From contig NW_025767190.1 in NCBI RefSeq assembly GCF_003918875.1, positions 62,001-126,000 on the forward strand: a stretch of DNA of 64,000 nucleotides, written 5' to 3'. Position 1 is the stretch's first letter, and each line of letters begins with the position of its first letter. This stretch comes from Haliotis rubra. Taxonomy: Eukaryota. The notes beneath the pieces are model-generated. The model did no database searches. It had not been told where the DNA came from and saw only the letters and a list, made by a program, of their open reading frames with translations. Below, piece by piece: positions 15,346 to 25,878 of the stretch. The position numbers were made by a program, and so were the translations under genes.

Positions 15346-16747
15346 TTCACAAAGTCTGTCGGCAACTGGGGAGAATATTATTATAATGACGTGAGAGTTT
15401 AACATGTTACAGTTAACTTTTTCCCCATTTATCACAATAACTGTAAATATATTGGTTTTTATAAATTCCGTTTGATTGTTTGGGTGTAGGTCAGTTATAC
15501 CAGTGACAGACATGTGCAGTCAACCAACTCACAGAACCTGGCCACACAGTTCCTGTAGCAATCAAGCATATATTGGCGGGATAGCTATTCTAACCTGGAA
15601 TGTTATACCGAGTGTTCTTTAAGAAGTTAACGCCGTCTGTAATTAAGGTGTAAACTAATTATCCACGCCCGGCCTATTTGACTACTCTTTGGGATTTTAC
15701 CAAAATTGTAAACATCTTAGACTTAAATCACTTCCGGATTTCCCCCAGCATGGTGCTGACACATCTGACCAAAGTACTGGACTTCCATTCTGTCTGCAGT
15801 ATATCTTGAACCTTTAACATGAATTCAGGTTACAAACAGCTCGTCTCGTCTCAGTGTAATGGGATCTCGGAATGCACTGGCAGGAATCCCTATAAGAACT
15901 GGTTCCGTCCACGTGACAAACAAAACCCCTGGGTCGGTAATAGTGTGACTGAAAAACTAATTTCTGGTGAGCAAACGATACATTATCTTCAAAAAGTGCC
16001 GTGAAGTAATTCAAAGGATATATTGTTAGACCCGCCGTTACAGCGTAATTCATGTTATGGCACAACACCATTTCTACCAAACGTCTTCAGTCTGTCATAC
16101 AAAAAATGAAACTGATATAATCAAGAAAGCCCATTCAAGTCAATAATATGTGCCAGGTCCAGATTACGGCAATTTCACTTGAATACTTCTTTTTTTATTT
16201 AAAAAAAAGTTAATTTAAGAAACGTTTCTCTGTTAAATATGTTTATTTCAGAGACTAGATGTAAGTACGAAGTATTGTACAAAGAAAACAGTACCGGAAT
16301 GAACCGAATGCATCGGAATGGTTCCGCACTACTGATGGTTGCTTTTCCAACATGGGAACACGATGTTCAGGACAGTACCACCCAGTCGTTACAAGGTTAC
16401 CCTTGCCGTGTCATACACGTGGGGCATGTGTTATTGTTTGCTCATCATTGTAGACGGACTGGGGTAGGGGGGGGTTAATGGTGCTGTTTGAACACAACGC
16501 CGGGGAATGCCCCAGTGTTTACGTCTCCCCTGATTAACAGCAACACGCTTTGTGGTAGTTGGAGTGAAAACATCAACACTATCATAGACATCAACAACAA
16601 ACATTACGGTTGTTATCGGTTCTTGTGAACAGCGTTGATGAACAAAGTGACAGATATTCAGTGACGCATATATACTGTTGTACTGAAGAATCGTTAGGAT
16701 GGGGTTAATAGCTGTAAAGGTCACGTCAGATAGTCAGGTGTACTAGA

Positions 16748-16773
16748 ACGTCACGTCACGTCACGTCACGTCA
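16748..16773. repeat. (ACGTC)n pentanucleotide microsatellite
   Basis: acgtc repeated five times. Confidence 0.9.
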
Positions 16774-18385
16774 GTTGCTAAGAAGATCAACCTGCTGTAT
16801 TTTGAAATTTGAGGTCGTTTCACTCAGAAAACGAAACATTTGCTTCTGGTCTGGAACCGAGAGTTTGTACAAATCAGTATCAATCACTGTTTGATGTCAT
16901 GGTAGAAGGTAGTGTATATCAACGACAGGTAAGCTACTTAGATTTACCCATACCCTTTACATCACCACAGCAAAAATAACTTCGTTTCCATTTTTGCGGA
17001 AACCTAATGGATACTGGGTAATGTACGTTTCCGCTAGGTTTCAGCATCCGGAAACAGACAATGTGAGTTTCCGCGTAGTTTACCAAACTGAAACTAACAA
17101 ATCTAGGTTTCCGTCTGATTTCTACAACTGAAACTGTCATTATGAGTTTCCATTTAGTTTCAGGTCGCTGAAAGATTCATAGCAAAATGACTTAGTTGTT
17201 GCGGAAACCTATTGGATACTGGGTAATGTAGGTTTCAGCTAGGTTTCTGTACCCGGAAACTAACAATTCTGTTGATTTCAGCTTAGATGAAATGGCAAAC
17301 TTAGCTTTGTGTTGTTCCATTGGGGGCTATATTAGTTTACTGTTACACTTGTAAAATAATTTCTATATACAGTATCCAGCTTGGGTCCATGCAGGGAGGA
17401 AAAGCAATAGCCCATTTTATACTGTACTGTTAAAGTGTTTATGGTTATATGTTTTTTAGTGTACATTTGTGATAGACTAGTTATTTTACTGTCTTTCGAA
17501 GACAGGTAAAAATTTTTATATATCGCACACATTTAAATTTCCAAGGTTAGTTTCAGCGACTGGAAACTACCGGAAACCAACAAAGTTAGTTTCCAGAACC
17601 GGAAATTTAAAGTAAAGTATCATTGGTAGTTTCCATTGCATAAAGCAGCTGGAAACCATCATTGATGGGACCGTCAATGAAACGAACGAACGAAATTACT
17701 CCATATATACCAGTATATACAGCATATAACCGACATTAACCTACGCTAAACTGTCTATGTATTCCATGTATATAAGTTTCAGTTTAGTGATCTCAGTGTT
17801 TTTGTACACCAGAATTCAAATAAAAGATACTGTCACATGAAAGAAGAATAATTTCAGGAAAAGTTAAACCATATTACGGAAACTTAAGATTCTACTTTGT
17901 CTCCTTAACGATTTGTTAGGTACACTCACAGATGCCTTAAACTTTTAAATTACTGAAGAACCGGTAAGGCTCCATTAGGTTTCAGTTACCCATTGGCTTT
18001 TCATTTGTTTTTCTCAAAGTGATACATACTAACACAACTAACTGGGAGTGGTTATGCACATTACACATATCTGTACTAAAAAGGACAATAATTTCGTAAA
18101 TGTCCAATAAAGAACATAATACAGGCTTCAACAAATTACACAGTAGACTTATAGATATAAAATATGTTTAAGTTTAACGTCATCTGCCAGTGGTGAAAAA
18201 TGTTGGGATTGAAAGAAAATGAAGTCAATGAACGTTTTGCCTTTTAATTATAGCATTATCATTATTGATCCATTATCATATTTATAAGCACTTTGGAACC
18301 TCATATATTTATTAAATGGCTTTCTAGATATGTCATAGAGTACCTAAAATATAAGGGAATCAGTTTACGACCTGAAAAAACTAAG

Positions 18386-18445
18386 AGATCTTGTTGGGTA
18401 CGCCCCTGGATTATCAGAAGAGGAGAGGTGGGGGCTTATAACTCA
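18386..18445 (+). pseudogene. Fragment resembling a PIF/Harbinger transposase N-terminus
   Basis: RSCWVRPWIIRRGEVGAYNS resembles the W-V-R-P-W-x-x-R-R-x-x-x-G-x-Y motif I recognise from Harbinger-type transposases; no DDE domain follows. Confidence 0.5.
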
Positions 18446-20460
18446 CATGAACAATGTTGTTTGTGGAATAATTTTGTTGAATGCTACAAGAAAAATGCAA
18501 ACAAAATACAGATATCAAACCAACTAACGTTATAACAAAACTAATGGGCTATTACCTTGTTCGAGAAAAGTATCCATCAGTATCCACATAATGGAACGAT
18601 ATGCCATTCATCGGCAGCTGCCCCCAAAACTGTTCCATGTCACGTGACCGGGTTTCACTGGACACCAAAGATAATACACCTGACAAGTTTTTACATAATG
18701 TCACAATTCTTTAAAAACGGTGCATGTTGTTTTAAGGGATTAGCTTTCTGAAATACCTAGCGAAATAGGTGACACGAACTCACCCCTTGTTCACTTACAT
18801 GATGAAAATCAATGAAATTGAACTCACTTAGCTTGTTTTGATTGATATGAGTAAGCACCAACTCATCAATTTTGGTACATAATATGCTGGCCATACTGGT
18901 CATCACTTTTATTATGGCAAACAGCAGTTACATGTGTAAAGTAAAAGTTCATTCCGACTTCACGAGGCTGTATGTATGGATGGTACATCTTGGATGTCCT
19001 GGGTATGTTGTAGAGTCTCAGCTGTCTCCACTGTCGATGATATAGTCACCAAACATCCTGACATACGTAACCACGAACGTGTCAACAATGATATAAAGGT
19101 ATAATTTATAAATATCCGCTGTGACAATGAATACAACATGTAAGATAAATATATTTTACAATACCACTGATGATTTGTCAACAGGAAGAATAAATGTACT
19201 TGCGTTCGCAGAAACAGTTTCATACTTAATGAAACTGCAGTGTAGACTGGATGTGTACTATGTACATGTATTATGAAATTGTTTTATCATTATGATGATT
19301 AAAATAATTTGTCCCAAGATGTCATTTTAATGGATTTTATTGTTGTTGCCATGTCATGAATATGTAAAATATTATCTAACATCTGGTATTTGCTACGGAT
19401 ATCACTTCGTTGTACAATTTATTTTGTTTTCAACTTGGGAATTTAGTGTTACCTGCATGCCTATCATCACAGATTATGTCCATTGTTCTCCAAGTGCGGT
19501 CAACCTGAAAATCCCTGTGTGTCGCCCATATTGTTGTTACAAACATCACAAATACTAAACCTTTTCAGTATACGTTAGTAACTCTACAAACATAAAGACT
19601 ATCTTTTGACGGGCCCTTTGACAAAGACGTCGTGCAAGATAAAAGTAATAAATCAATTAGCGTGTTATCGGTTAATCCTTTCATCTGTGTTTGTTTTTAA
19701 CTCAGCTGATAATTCCTTTTGCTGCTCCTGCATGCATATATTACATAACATGTAGTTCACTAGATGACCATCAAGTGAATGATGACAAATAAACGGGTAA
19801 AATCGTTGTATTGCATGCAATATTAATTGCCTACAGAATCTTAGGGAACTACGCTGTGTGGTTTTAAAATAATAGGTCATCAACCATCACATTGTTCTTG
19901 ATATGATTAAATATCAGGTAATAGTTTTAAAGAAATACACAGAAATAGGATCAAATTGGATCGGTCATATACGATCAACGCAACGGAAAATCTGAAAAAG
20001 CTTATACTGACTGCTGGAGTACTTTATTACGGGAAATACATCCACTGTTCTTATTGTTTCATTCTTTAGGTTGAGGAAATTCTGCCATGGTTGACAGCTG
20101 CCCAGTCCCTGGGTCCGTCACGGTCGAGGTAGCATGTGCTGCAGTCAGACCACATACTAAAATTGTTGTCCCGAAACCGGAAGCGCTTGATTTGGAGTGA
20201 ATGAGGCGTCGCGAGATGTGACGGACATTGTAAAACAAACAATTTACATAAACACATATTGCAGTTATCAGTGTTTTCCAAGCTTATGAAGGGTAAGCAG
20301 ACTATTGGCATGTTAACAATAGAAATGAAAAAGCAACCTAATTGACTACCCATAAGTCTTTGTTTGAAATGCCGCCATCTTTGTTCAAACGTACACGCGC
20401 GAGGATTGGAAAAACTTCGTTGTTGTTTCCAAGTAAGTCTATGAGAGTAAGGTAGTAGAA

Positions 20461-21816
20461 ATGGCAGTCTGTATACTTGCTATAGTTTTCTTGACACATG
20501 GCAACAAACTTGACAATCGAAGCTTTGGAAACAAGGATCCGGGAACTCAAGCTGATCTCAACGGAAACCCAAGACAGAGAAATTGGCAGGTAGGTTTCAG
20601 ATAAAATTAATTATTTTCTTCTTATCATAGCAGTCAGTTTGCATCGAATTAAACGTTTTCGGTAGGACCCGGAACCTTTATCGTACATTAACTGTGCGCT
20701 CGCATTTCGATTTCTCCCACGGTTATAAATGTGAACATTGCATTTTGGTGTGAAATTTGTTAAAAAACAACATTATTGTTGATACCAACTGAACATTCCG
20801 TTAAAATATAACCATAAGACAAGTATACCCTTGTGTTCCTGTACGTTGAGTCTGATGTTTATATAATTTTGATTTCCTGCGGCAGCTCATTTTGTTGCTG
20901 GGCACAACCAACACCATAACCAAATATTTATTCTTCAGTCATTTTTCTGAGTGTAATTTTGTCTCAGTATTATTCTTTTCTTGTCGGACTATTTCAATTA
21001 TGTATCCAGCTAAATTGGAACCGTGTACTGGAGCGGTGTTTATATAAGACACTTGGCTTGTTCACCTTTCCAGGTTATTGATGGAATAAAAATATATTTT
21101 AAGAAATTGTTATACATGTATCCAGCAAGGCAACAAATATAGATGAAACCAGTAGTTCATGATATTCCGGTGGAAAATATTACCAATCGACATATGTTCA
21201 TGATCCAAATGTGTGTCTCTTTTTGTTTTAGGCTATTGTGAGAAGAATCATGGAAAAGTTCCCGGAGTACCTTGAAAATCGATTAAAAGTTACTTATTTA
21301 AGGTAAAAAAACTTACCCCAAGTTTTATTATTGCTCGTCATCATAATCAAGATATATGTTGGGTTTTATAAGATTAGAGACGTCAGTATTACAAAATACA
21401 ATTAATTCGTTTATTGTTCACCATTGGGTAAATCTAGCATCTAATTATTTCATTGTTAGGTATCTAGTACTAGCAGTAGAATTGACATAGCATACTATTA
21501 TGTAGTGCATATTTGCTGCATAATCATGTCTGTCATGTTAATAGAAAACTTCTCACGCCCGGGCTGTAATGCATATACGTGTAGTTGATATACCACAATT
21601 ACTTATTACTTGGTTTGATACATGATAATAATCAAACTTATGAATGTTTGTGTCGGATTGTAATAATCTATTATTGGACGAATGAAACTTAATTCATTTG
21701 CTTTTCTTAATAGAAACCTTTTGGATAATCTGGAGGAGCAAGACGGACGATCGACGTCGGCAGACTACAGGAAAGAAAACACAGGAAAGATGCTAAAAAG
21801 AAACAAAAGAATCTGA
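20461..21816 (+). CDS. Putative 3-exon, 100-aa transposon-borne gene of unknown function (may be decayed)
   Basis: Exons 20461-20589 (CAG|gtagg), 21232-21302 (ttttgttttag| ... AG|gtaaa) and 21714-21816 (ttttcttaatag|, TGA) splice in frame; a further donor gtaagt lies at 21820 and AATAAA downstream. Confidence 0.4.
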
Positions 21817-22791
21817 TCTGTAAGTTCCTGAAACTGGATAATATAATATAATTTGTACCGGTTTATACACTTCCTGACACCAGTTTAAAACACTCTGAGT
21901 CACTGACATGATGTGCTACATATTATCACATCGCTATATACCTGTAATAGAATAACTTTCCTTATCACATGTCATTACCCATCACCGTAATGTGCCATTA
22001 TCTAATTAGAACAAGTGCCGCACTCAAGAATAAATGTTGGACATAACTTTCGCAGTGCAAGAATTTCATTTTTTTCCCCAGAAACTCCAACACCTCCTGA
22101 AGAATCTAGCTGGGCAGAGAAAAGAACACAGAAGGTGGCTGCAGTCCTAACCCTTGAATTGACATCGCCAGTGGTGTCTGAAGCTCCAGCGGCAAAATGA
22201 AGAACTTGCGACACCATCCAACAAGATTCTTTCCAACCACCTAAAGGTCTTAGGAATAGGATGGAATGTCTAAATGTACATTCAATTATCTCCTGTAGTC
22301 ACCCTGTTTAGGACAAGAACATCTGTCTCTCTCTCTCTGTCCCTCTGTGTGCTTTGTGCCAATGTTTAATTGTAACATTGAAACATAGATATGATATATA
22401 TGTTTATGATGAATAAAGAGAAATCGATTGACATGCCTGATTTTGTATTTATTTATTTCTATGTCCATGTGGTGTTGAGGTAACTGTAGTTGAAATGAGT
22501 TTATTTTATATTTCAATGTATCATGAATAAAATATATGACCTAATACATTCAAATATATAATACACTCATTTCACCTACAGTTAATTTAGTTGAATAATC
22601 ATAATTTAATATGGACATATGGTAATCACTGAATACTAATGATTGAAACCAAATGGAGCCATACAGATTCTGATTTACTGAAACTTATGGAACATGGTAA
22701 ATGTGTTTAATAGAATCGAAATTCACAGGGAATCATAATTGAACTAAGTAAATACAATGTATATGAAACCATCTAAAAGTAGAGGATAAGG

Positions 22792-22990
22792 GAAACCCAA
22801 TGGAACCTCATAGGAATCTGCGTAACGGAAACGCACTGGAACCATACAGGAATCTGGGTTACGGAAACGCACTGGAGCCCTACAGGAAAAAGGGTAACGG
22901 AAACGCACTGGAGCCTTACTGGAAAGTGGGTAACGGAAACGCACTGGAGCCCTTACTGGAAACTGGGTAACGGAAACGCACTGGAGCCAT
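22792..22990. repeat. 36-bp subterminal tandem repeats of the transposon (about 6 copies)
   Basis: ggaaacgcactggagcc-tac-ggaaa--gggtaac repeated. Confidence 0.9.
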
Positions 22991-23146
22991 GCCGGTTTCT
23001 GGGTAATTTGTAAGTTTCCGTTTTCCGGAAACTTGAAGGAAATGTAGAGAAACGTTCCGGAAACCTAGTTGAAACGTAAGTTTCCATTTTGTTTCCGTTA
23101 GGTTTCCGGGGTCCGGAAACCAAGTTATTTTTGCTGTGCACATTAG

Positions 23147-23772
23147 GTACATAGGTGTATACAGCTATCACGTCATATAAATAGGTGTATACAGGTATCA
23201 CGTCAGATACATAGGTGCATACAGCTGTCACGTCAGATACATAGGTGTATACAGCTATCACGTCAGATACATAGGTGTATACAGCTGTCACGTCAGATAC
23301 ATAGGTGCATACAGCTATCACGTCAGATACATAGGTGCATACAGCTATCACGTCAGATACATAGGTGCATACAGCTATCACGTCAGATACATAGGTGTAT
23401 ACAGCTGTCACGTCAGATACATAGGTGTATACAGCTGTCACGTCAGATACATAGGTGTATACAGCTATCACGTCAGATACATAGGTGCATAGGTGTCAGA
23501 TACATACAGCTATCACGTCAGATACATAGGTGTATACAGCTATCACGTCAGATACATAGGTGTATACAGCTGTCACGTCAGATACATAGGTGCATACAGC
23601 TATCACGTCAGATACATAGGTGCATACAGCTATCACGTCAGATACATAGGTGTATACAGCTATCACGTCAGATACATAGGTGCATACAGCTGTCACGTCA
23701 GATACATAGGTGTATACAGCCATCAGATACGTCAGCTGTCAGATACGCTGATACAGTATCACGTCAGATACA
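23147..23772. repeat. 30-bp minisatellite (about 20 copies)
   Basis: Unit gatacataggtg(t/c)atacagct(a/g)tcacgtca; source of the YVSDVIAVYT ORFs. Confidence 0.97.
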
Positions 23773-25321: not shown

Positions 25322-25878
25322 TCCACAAAGTACTTAGTTAAGCACCCCTTGACATATCTCACGATTCAATGAGCCCCGATCTTAACCTTTTGGAGCATAT
25401 CTTGGACATGATTGGTCGTCGTGTGCAACAAAGCGATTCTCTTGTACAGAACCTGGCCCAATTGGAAGCTGCTTTACTCGAGGAATGTCGTAGAATGCCC
25501 CTTCAGAGGATCAGGAGGCTGACTAGAGGTATGAGGAGGAGAGTGCTGGCTGTCATGCAGTCACATGGAGGTTACACTTGGTATTCACCTTGAATCGTGT
25601 AAGACACGCAAAATGACATTTTGAATGTGAACATTCACCAATAAATTCAACATTAAACATTCCAGGCCCATACTTGTACAGACATGGTTTTAAAATGAGC
25701 AATTATCATCATAAAATCAACATGGATTCTAATCATTTTGTCGTTTATAGGAGTCAATGGATCATGCAGGTCAGAAAAACTCATGTTTTCCCATCGTGGT
25801 CACCACGAGAAGCTTTATGTACGTGTTGAAAAAATCATTGCAAAAATACAGGGGGTGCTTAATTAAGTTCTTTGTGTA
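25322..25878 (+). mobile_element. Internally deleted Tc1/mariner element
   Basis: TIRs tccacaaagtacttagttaagcacccc / ggggtgcttaattaagttctttgtgta with TA on both sides. ORF 25369-25593 (SPDLNLLEHILD...MRRRVLAVMQSHGGYTWY) is a Tc1 transposase C-terminus. Confidence 0.92.

What the first reader, a model, noticed from the sequence alone, without database searches (positions are those of the whole stretch)
16966..23138. 6.2-kb CACTA-like transposon carrying intron-containing cargo instead of a transposase
Seen: 24-bp TIRs beginning CACAG, a perfect 3-bp TSD and subterminal repeat arrays, including a 47-bp duplication at about 16997 and 17201 and 36-bp tandem units at 22792. Known: CAC termini, 2-3-bp TSDs and subterminal repeats characterise CMC/EnSpm elements. 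Inference: this is a non-autonomous derivative whose interior holds several canonically spliced exons of unrecognised proteins, so it may be an undescribed family or a gene-capturing element. It is the strongest candidate for a novel system in this window.
Basis: partly seen in the sequence, partly recalled or inferred. Interest (0 to 1): 0.7.

Follow-up and report, generated by a model that had tools for sequence, protein, structure and literature searches.

The report
Non-autonomous EnSpm/CACTA transposon, young family
This is one copy of a young family of a few hundred ordinary cut-and-paste (EnSpm/CACTA-type) DNA transposons that has lost its own transposase and borrows one from related elements in the genome; its interior shows no sign of carrying genes.

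Summary
Window 16966-23138 is a 6,173-bp element with 24-bp terminal inverted repeats (23 of 24 bases complementary) starting CACAG. It has a CAC target-site duplication, a duplicated subterminal block and a 36-bp tandem array.

It is a real and very young transposon. The 24-bp terminus occurs 194 times in the 1.38-Gb genome (reversed control 0). Nineteen of 20 copies examined have perfect 3-bp duplications of varied sequence. The window copy differs from its subfamily consensus by 0.39%.

The CACTA-like, non-autonomous reading is supported and now has a direct link. At G000:C2227 the same terminus and an 87%-identical left subterminal region sit 0.56 kb from an open 877-codon frame with Pfam Transposase_21 (TNP2/EnSpm type). 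A sibling family of about 8.3 kb consists of deletion derivatives of that element and carries the matching right terminus.

The "intron-containing cargo" reading is not supported. A 16-copy consensus has no frame over 109 codons, and frames are broken by non-triplet indels between subfamilies. All 109 stop-free pieces lack Pfam hits, and two large protein searches found no relatives. About 1.6 kb of the interior derives from another abundant repeat. RNA data could not be obtained.

Verdict: a new member of a known kind, of low interest.

The parts
16963..16965 (.). Left copy of the 3-bp target-site duplication (CAC).
   Evidence: Read. A 3-bp TSD is seen in 19 of 20 copies.
16966..16989 (+). 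Left terminal inverted repeat, CACAGCAAAAATAACTTCGTTTCC.
   Evidence: pair I5. There are 194 exact genome matches against 0 for the control. It is 23 of 24 bases identical to the terminus next to the transposase frame at C2227.
16990..17994 (.). Left subterminal region. It holds 15 copies of the (C/T)GGAAAC motif in both orientations. It also holds a 72-nt block duplicated at 16991-17062 and 17196-17267, and one inverted copy of the 36-bp unit at 17961-17994. These are the likely transposase docking sites.
   Evidence: The first 300 bp are 87% identical to the left end of the transposase-bearing element. Motif columns are conserved 53 of 54 against 227 of 276 for the rest.
17995..22643 (.). 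Interior of 4.6 kb. It is unrelated to the transposase-bearing element and shows no evidence of coding.
18467..20081 (-). Stretch of the interior that is fragmentarily 72-92% identical to an unrelated repeat. That repeat has at least 3,752 first-look candidates in the genome.
   Evidence: It also accounts for the more than 2,000 candidates found for 17300-21300, against 191 for 21301-22780.
22481..22584 (.). Palindrome of 104 bp inside the element (41-nt arms, 90% complementary, 22-nt loop). Its role is unknown.
   Evidence: pair I1. Self-matches on the minus strand appear.
22644..23114 (.). Right subterminal region. It holds 14 GGAAAC motifs and includes the 36-bp tandem array at 22787-22988 (5.6 units).
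   Evidence: Compared with the right end of the sibling family, motif columns are conserved 63 of 78 against 136 of 252 for the rest.
23115..23138 (-). Right terminal inverted repeat (reverse complement CACAGCAAAAATAACTTGGTTTCC).
23139..23141 (.). Right copy of the 3-bp target-site duplication (CAC).

Best explanation
Window 16966-23138 is one copy of a young, non-autonomous family of the CMC superfamily, EnSpm/CACTA type, with at least about 190 copies.

The proposed mechanism is as follows. A TNP2-type DDE transposase is encoded elsewhere in the genome by related elements with the same termini. It recognises the CACAG termini and the arrays of (C/T)GGAAAC motifs in about 1 kb of left and about 0.5 kb of right subterminal sequence. 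It cuts the element out and pastes it elsewhere, making a 3-bp duplication with little target preference.

The 4.6-kb interior is passenger DNA without a gene. It is unrelated to the transposase-bearing element, and about a third of it comes from another dispersed repeat.

Shown here:
- the structure, the family and the target-site duplications;
- the youth of the copies;
- the physical link of the termini to a Transposase_21 frame;
- the lack of coding signal in the interior.

Inferred, not shown:
- that this particular transposase moves the family;
- that the GGAAAC motifs are its binding sites;
- that the family is still active.
For: TIRs, TSD and subterminal repeats are present.

Family size: there are 194 exact terminus matches against 0 for the control. 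First-look candidates number 441 for the left end, 399 for the right end and 191 for the interior.

Target sites: 19 of 20 copies have perfect 3-bp TSDs, in 13 different trinucleotides.

Age: copies are 0.16-0.5% from the subfamily consensus, and the window copy is at 0.39%.

Link to a transposase: at C2227 the terminus (23 of 24 bases) and 306 bp at 87% identity, including the same internal duplication, lie 0.56 kb from an open 877-codon frame. That frame matches PF02992 Transposase_21 at E=3e-16. It has 151 relatives carrying the same domain in molluscs, amphioxus, brachiopods and corals.

Sibling family: it is collinear with C2227 over 9.5 kb and retains positions 11-218 and 2433-2621 of the frame's 2,631-bp DNA. 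It ends in the same right terminus at a constant 6.7 kb in at least six loci.

GGAAAC motif columns are better conserved than the spacers between them (P=0.0014 and 2e-5).

Interior.

Published criteria: CAC..GTG termini with 3-bp TSDs mark EnSpm (PMC12730594).
Against: No transposase-bearing copy with both termini and a TSD was recovered. The C2227 copy has no right terminus within 16.5 kb. So 'autonomous partner' is an inference.

The left ends are 87% identical, not identical, so a closer and unseen transposase source is possible.

No RNA data were available, so short spliced exons or a non-coding RNA in the interior are not excluded.

No empty-site allele was found; the left flank is single-copy in the assembly.
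Confidence: 0.85

Rival explanations
1. One reading: the interior is cargo made of canonically spliced exons of unknown proteins, making this a gene-capturing (Pack-like) or otherwise novel element.
For: The interior is long (4.6 kb), uniform across copies and unrelated to the transposase-bearing element. RNA evidence could not be obtained.
Against: - The 16-copy consensus has no frame over 109 codons.
- Non-triplet indels fall inside the frames, and substitutions by codon position are 7/9/5.
- None of 109 stop-free pieces has a Pfam hit at E<=0.01.
- The 109-codon frame's only hit in 1.84 billion proteins is the translation of a tandem repeat.
- The 107-codon frame has no hit in the word search.
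- About 1.6 kb is a diverged piece of another repeat.
Confidence: 0.07
2. It is a PIF/Harbinger-type element. These also make 3-bp duplications and are very abundant in this genome.
For: The TSD is 3 bp. There are about 1,879 DDE_Tnp_4 candidates in the genome. A WVRPW..GAY motif at 18269-18532 recalled, from memory, the N-termini of animal Harbinger transposases.
Against: - The TSDs are not TWA-biased; they include CAC, CCT, AGC, TGT and ACT.
- The termini are CAC..GTG.
- Three Harbinger transposases from this genome gave no tblastn match.
- The WVRPW frame found no Harbinger protein in 1.84 billion representatives.
- The termini are physically linked to a Transposase_21 frame instead.
Confidence: 0.02
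3. The 6.2-kb element is itself autonomous and encodes a transposase in many short exons that the scans missed.
For: Nearly all copies have the same 6.2-6.4 kb length. EnSpm transposase genes can have many introns (PMC4158355, abstract seen).
Against: - No Transposase_21 signal appears in any piece of 30 or more codons.
- 120 EnSpm-type homologues give no tblastn hit at E<=0.1 against the copy or the consensus.
- The related transposase in this genome is a single uninterrupted 877-codon frame.
Confidence: 0.02

Closest known systems
EnSpm/CACTA elements of the CMC (CACTA-Mirage-Chapaev) superfamily, including non-autonomous derivatives such as dSpm/I of maize
   Same: CAC...GTG termini, 3-bp TSDs without a strict target sequence, and arrays of short subterminal motifs in both orientations. 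There is a TNP2/Transposase_21-type DDE transposase in related copies, plus deletion derivatives and non-autonomous relatives that outnumber the coding copies.
   Different: The terminus reads CACAG, not CACTA. The host is a mollusc, probably an abalone. The transposase frame of the relative is intron-free over 877 codons, and no second (TnpA-like) gene was seen. The interior of this family is not a deletion remnant of the coding element but unrelated DNA that includes a piece of another repeat.
Animal EnSpm-type transposases annotated as 'uncharacterized protein', for example LOC125381851 of Haliotis rufescens, and relatives in Branchiostoma, Pinctada, Lingula and Mytilus
   Same: They carry the same Pfam domain (PF02992, often with PF06869), are of similar length (800-1000 residues) and align over 90-97% of the query.
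   Different: The best is only 49% identical, so this lineage's transposase is not among the annotated proteins at close range. Those records give no termini to compare.
Pack-type gene-capturing DNA transposons (Pack-MULE, Pack-CACTA)
   Same: Long non-autonomous elements whose interior is foreign to the autonomous element.
   Different: Pack elements carry recognisable host exon fragments, and none was found here. The only identified source of the interior is another repeat.

Membership tests
CMC superfamily, EnSpm/CACTA type | Termini 5'-CAC...GTG-3' within terminal inverted repeats. | tested here: met
   CACAG...CTGTG in 24-bp TIRs. The termini are the same in all copies examined. Criterion as stated in PMC12730594.
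CMC superfamily, EnSpm/CACTA type | 3-bp target-site duplication. | tested here: met
   19 of 20 copies, in 13 different trinucleotides.
CMC superfamily, EnSpm/CACTA type | Multiple short subterminal repeats in direct and inverted orientation. | tested here: met
   29 (C/T)GGAAAC motifs lie in the subterminal regions against 3 in the interior. The motifs are preferentially conserved between lineages.
CMC superfamily, EnSpm/CACTA type | A TNP2-type DDE transposase (Pfam Transposase_21) encoded between such termini in autonomous members. | tested here: inconclusive
   An 877-codon frame with PF02992 (E=3e-16) lies 0.56 kb inside the same left terminus at C2227. Deletion derivatives of it end in the same right terminus. 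No single copy with the frame and both termini was recovered.
CMC superfamily, EnSpm/CACTA type | This copy encodes the transposase, i.e. it is autonomous. | tested here: not met
   No Transposase_21 signal and no tblastn match to 120 homologues. The copy is therefore a non-autonomous member.
CMC superfamily, EnSpm/CACTA type | Mobilisation by that transposase. | not testable with these tools
   This needs an excision or transposition assay.
PIF/Harbinger | DDE_Tnp_4 transposase, with a 3-bp TSD that is usually TWA. | tested here: not met
   The TSDs are varied. There is no similarity to DDE_Tnp_4 proteins of this genome and no Pfam hit.
Transib/RAG-like (the CMC branch with CAC termini) | 5-bp target-site duplication. 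| tested here: not met
   The 5-bp flanks differ (atcac against cacat). All copies show 3 bp.
Pack-type gene-capturing element | Interior made of recognisable host gene fragments. | tested here: inconclusive
   No protein similarity of any kind was found. The host's own gene set and transcripts could not be searched, and copies of the family crowd out weaker genome matches.

The most novel reading that the evidence does not exclude
The 4.6-kb interior is kept uniform in about 190 copies and is unrelated to the coding element. It might carry something that favours this family's own spread, such as a spliced small gene, a non-coding RNA or a cis-acting sequence. That would explain why this family has more and younger copies than the plain deletion derivatives of the coding element.
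Probability: 0.06. Interest if true: 0.5.

Novelty: new member of a known kind. Interest (0 to 1): 0.2.

Why it matters
The main value is for annotation. This is a large, very young DNA-transposon family: about 0.2-0.5% divergence and at least about 190 copies of 6.2 kb, or more than 1 Mb of sequence. It sits in what is probably an abalone genome, and it is now tied to its transposase type.

Its youth suggests that EnSpm-type transposition was active very recently, and perhaps still is, in this mollusc. That makes insertions such as this one useful polymorphic markers. It also makes the transposase and its termini a candidate for a native genetic tool.

It does not reveal a new kind of system.

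Tried and rejected
1. Harbinger remnant idea. A WVRPW..GAY motif in the frame at 18269-18532 suggested a decayed Harbinger transposase N-terminus. This was rejected: tblastn with local Harbinger proteins was blank. The full HMMER search returned only P0001, which is the translation of a tandem repeat.

2. Longer copies as autonomous forms. The 11.8-kb copy at C404 is the 6.2-kb element with a nested non-LTR retrotransposon. The 9.6- and 7.1-kb copies (L040 and L041) are the 6.2-kb element interrupted by single extra blocks of 3.4 and 0.7 kb, which I did not characterise.

I did not try another route.

4. Empty-site allele or haplotig. The left flank 16200-16965 is single-copy in the assembly.

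5. Right end of the C2227 transposase-bearing copy. It was not found within 16.5 kb, where a tandem array follows. Guessed stretches at C2586 missed.

6. Rfam. Only a sub-threshold miRNA-family match in the right subterminal repeats, at 25 bits against a gathering score of 88.

7. dN/dS between subfamilies. Only 21 substitutions fall in the frames, too few for a rate test. The indel pattern is the informative part.

8. PDB sequence search with the transposase found no match.

9. Spliced models.

10. Consensus. A majority consensus of 16 copies of this DNA transposon (not a virus or provirus) was made inside a script, only to count open frames and substitutions. It was not printed.
Full report
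**The observation**

The two ends are 24-nt inverted repeats with one mismatch, CACAGCAAAAATAACTT(C/G)GTTTCC. Both are flanked by CAC.

A subterminal block is duplicated at 16991-17062 and 17196-17267. A 36-bp unit is repeated 5.6 times at 22787-22988.

The common element of all these repeats is the motif (C/T)GGAAAC. It occurs 15 times in the first kilobase, 14 times in the last 420 bp and only 3 times in the 4.7 kb between, in both orientations.

**It is a real, mobile family**

The genome (G000) has 1.38 Gb in 2,855 contigs. The window is C2300:62001-126000.
- The exact 24-bp terminus occurs 194 times, against 0 for the reversed control.
- The left 335 bp gave 441 first-look candidates and the right 359 bp gave 399, with the best 40 of each at 88-100% identity.
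- The interior segment 21301-22780 gave 191 candidates. I take this as the rough copy number of this family.

I fetched 20 paired copies plus one more. Of the 20 in which both ends were found, 19 have a perfect 3-bp duplication. The trinucleotides are CAC, TTA, ATT, CCT, ACT, TAC, TGT, ATA, TGA, AAT, AGC, TAG and TAT. One of the 19, L044, needs a 3-bp correction of my end call, and one copy, L029, has no duplication. This fixes the element boundary, which is ambiguous in the window copy alone because its TSD equals the first three bases of the TIR.

Copies are 6.15-6.4 kb long. Three are longer. One of them carries a nested non-LTR retrotransposon. The other two are interrupted by single extra blocks of 3.4 and 0.7 kb that I did not characterise.

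The window copy differs from its subfamily consensus at 24 of 6,170 aligned positions (0.39%). Its closest relatives differ by 0.16-0.5%, and a second subfamily by 2.0-2.4% and by indels. The burst is therefore very recent.

**What kind of element it is**

The genome holds a few loci matching Pfam Transposase_21 (PF02992), the TNP2-type transposase of EnSpm/CACTA elements. One, at C2227, is an uninterrupted 877-codon frame that matches PF02992 at E=3e-16.

Reading its flanks gave the key result. The frame runs on the opposite strand, towards the terminus, and ends 0.56 kb from it. At that point lies CACAGCAAAAATAACTTAGTTTCC, which matches 23 of 24 bases of the window's left TIR. It is followed by 306 bp that are 87% identical to the window's left subterminal region, including the same internal duplication.

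The frame contains stretches that I recognise from memory as the conserved blocks of TNP2 transposases...LALNIDWF......AAADIPAARKLCGF..HQGCSHC......DPMHN......FSFERYNG.... I did not align these to a reference. [quoted passage not shown]

The word search found 151 relatives. All but one of the 120 listed carry PF02992. The best named one is from Haliotis rufescens at 49% identity, and others come from Branchiostoma, Pinctada, Lingula, Mytilus and corals.

**The link to the right terminus**

A DNA search with the frame found about six long copies at 90-100% identity. It also found more than 25 loci in which only positions 11-218 and 2433-2621 of the frame's DNA remain, joined together. One such element, at C441, is collinear with the C2227 element over 9.5 kb at 67-93% identity. 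It ends in the same right terminus as the window element.

In at least six loci that terminus lies a constant 6.7 kb from the frame remnant. A 27-bp version of the terminus specific to this sibling family occurs 85 times.

So three kinds of element share these ends:
- a few transposase-bearing copies;
- deletion derivatives of them, about 8.3 kb long;
- the 6.2-kb family of the window.

With CAC..GTG termini, 3-bp TSDs, subterminal motif arrays and a linked TNP2-type transposase, assignment to EnSpm/CACTA within CMC is well founded. The published criteria are in PMC12730594.

PIF/Harbinger is the other common 3-bp-TSD superfamily and is very abundant here. It is excluded by the varied TSDs, the termini and the lack of any protein similarity. 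Transib-like elements are excluded by the TSD length.

**How it most likely works**

The window element shares about 540 bp with the coding lineage at the left end and the last 140 bp at the right end. Within these shared regions the GGAAAC motif columns are better conserved than the spacers:
- left end: 53 of 54 motif columns against 227 of 276 other columns, P=0.0014;
- right end: 63 of 78 against 136 of 252, P=2e-5.

One caveat applies: the motif columns were defined on the window copy. This pattern is what is expected of docking sites for the element's protein, as in En/Spm, where subterminal motifs are bound by an element-encoded protein (established knowledge).

I therefore infer trans-mobilisation by the TNP2-type transposase. 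It would recognise the termini and the motif arrays and generate 3-bp duplications. This step is inferred, not shown.

**The interior**

The claim of spliced cargo genes finds no support.
- The window copy's longest stop-free stretch is 137 codons. The 16-copy consensus has none above 109.
- Between the two subfamilies the frames carry indels of 1, 14, 18 and 148 bp. The 21 substitutions fall 7/9/5 by codon position.
- None of 109 stop-free pieces of 30 or more codons matches a Pfam family at E<=0.01.
- The 109-codon frame was scored against 1.84 billion representative proteins. It found only the translation of a tandem repeat.
- The 107-codon frame, intact in most copies, found nothing in the word search.
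- Neither local EnSpm or Harbinger transposases nor 120 EnSpm homologues match the element by tblastn. The interior is therefore not a decayed transposase gene.
- Rfam gave nothing above threshold.

Window 18467-20081 is fragmentarily 72-92% identical to a different repeat with at least 3,752 candidates in the genome. That repeat also explains why 17300-21300 draws over 2,000 candidates while 21301-22780 draws 191. The interior is thus best read as passenger DNA that includes older repeat material.

The limits of this conclusion are:
- no RNA data were available;
- the host gene set could not be searched;
- family copies crowd out weaker genome matches.

**Surroundings**

The element sits at the very edge of a 30-bp minisatellite at 23139-23725, in a region rich in transposon fragments. 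One example is a Tc1/mariner C-terminal piece at 25342-25590.

A short open frame ending in CAG|GTAAGC lies 35 bp upstream of the insertion, at 16809-16928. It might be an exon, but I did not test it.

The left flank is single-copy, so the assembly holds no empty-site allele.

**What remains open**

No transposase-bearing copy with both termini was recovered. The C2227 copy has no right terminus within 16.5 kb. Comparison with Repbase or Dfam was not possible.

Earlier notes of this scan call the organism an abalone. That fits the best named protein hit, but I did not test it otherwise.

N stretches were left alone.

**Verdict**

The 'CACTA-like, non-autonomous' reading is supported and is now tied to a transposase. 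The 'intron-containing cargo / novel system' reading is not supported. This is a new member of a known kind, notable mainly for its youth and copy number.

Noticed in passing
window 23139-23725: A 30-bp minisatellite (about 19 units, with higher-order periods of 60, 90 and 195 bp) begins exactly at the right target-site duplication. The element inserted at the edge of the array.
   Followed up: partly
G000:C2118:289325-290230: Six exact copies of the 27-bp element terminus at 176-bp spacing. This is a tandem array built from a transposon end.
   Followed up: no
G000:C557:989164-989417: Two inward-facing exact TIRs 254 bp apart, a MITE-sized derivative of the same family group.
   Followed up: no
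L045 2139-7032 (G000:C404): A non-LTR retrotransposon nested in one copy of the family. It has open frames for a 492-aa gag-like protein with zinc knuckles, a 315-aa endonuclease, a 648-aa reverse transcriptase and a 168-aa RNase H-like piece, so it looks recently active.
   Followed up: partly
L050 and L052 (G000:C1546 and C738): Harbinger-type DDE_Tnp_4 frames sit next to frames that look, by eye, like a YqaJ-type exonuclease (one with a PHD-like finger). The genome has about 1,879 DDE_Tnp_4 candidates.
   Followed up: no
P0003 and P0076: EnSpm-type transposases of 634-900 aa are filed under bacterial MAGs (Sedimenticola, Candidatus Thiodiazotropha). This may be animal host DNA binned with bacterial MAGs; not checked.
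   Followed up: no
window 22481-22584: A 104-bp palindrome (41-nt arms, 90% complementary) inside the element, present in other copies too. Its role is unknown.
   Followed up: no
window 16809-16928: A short open frame ending in a good splice-donor consensus (CAG|GTAAGC) 35 bp upstream of the insertion. If it is a real exon, the element lies at the start of an intron.
   Followed up: no
L053 1-3465 and L057 1187-4733: The DNA left of the C2227 transposase-bearing element is itself a copy (95.6% identical) of a repeat of at least 3.5 kb. In the other copy the homology stops exactly at the transposon terminus, so that copy serves as a paralogous empty site for the left junction.
   Followed up: partly
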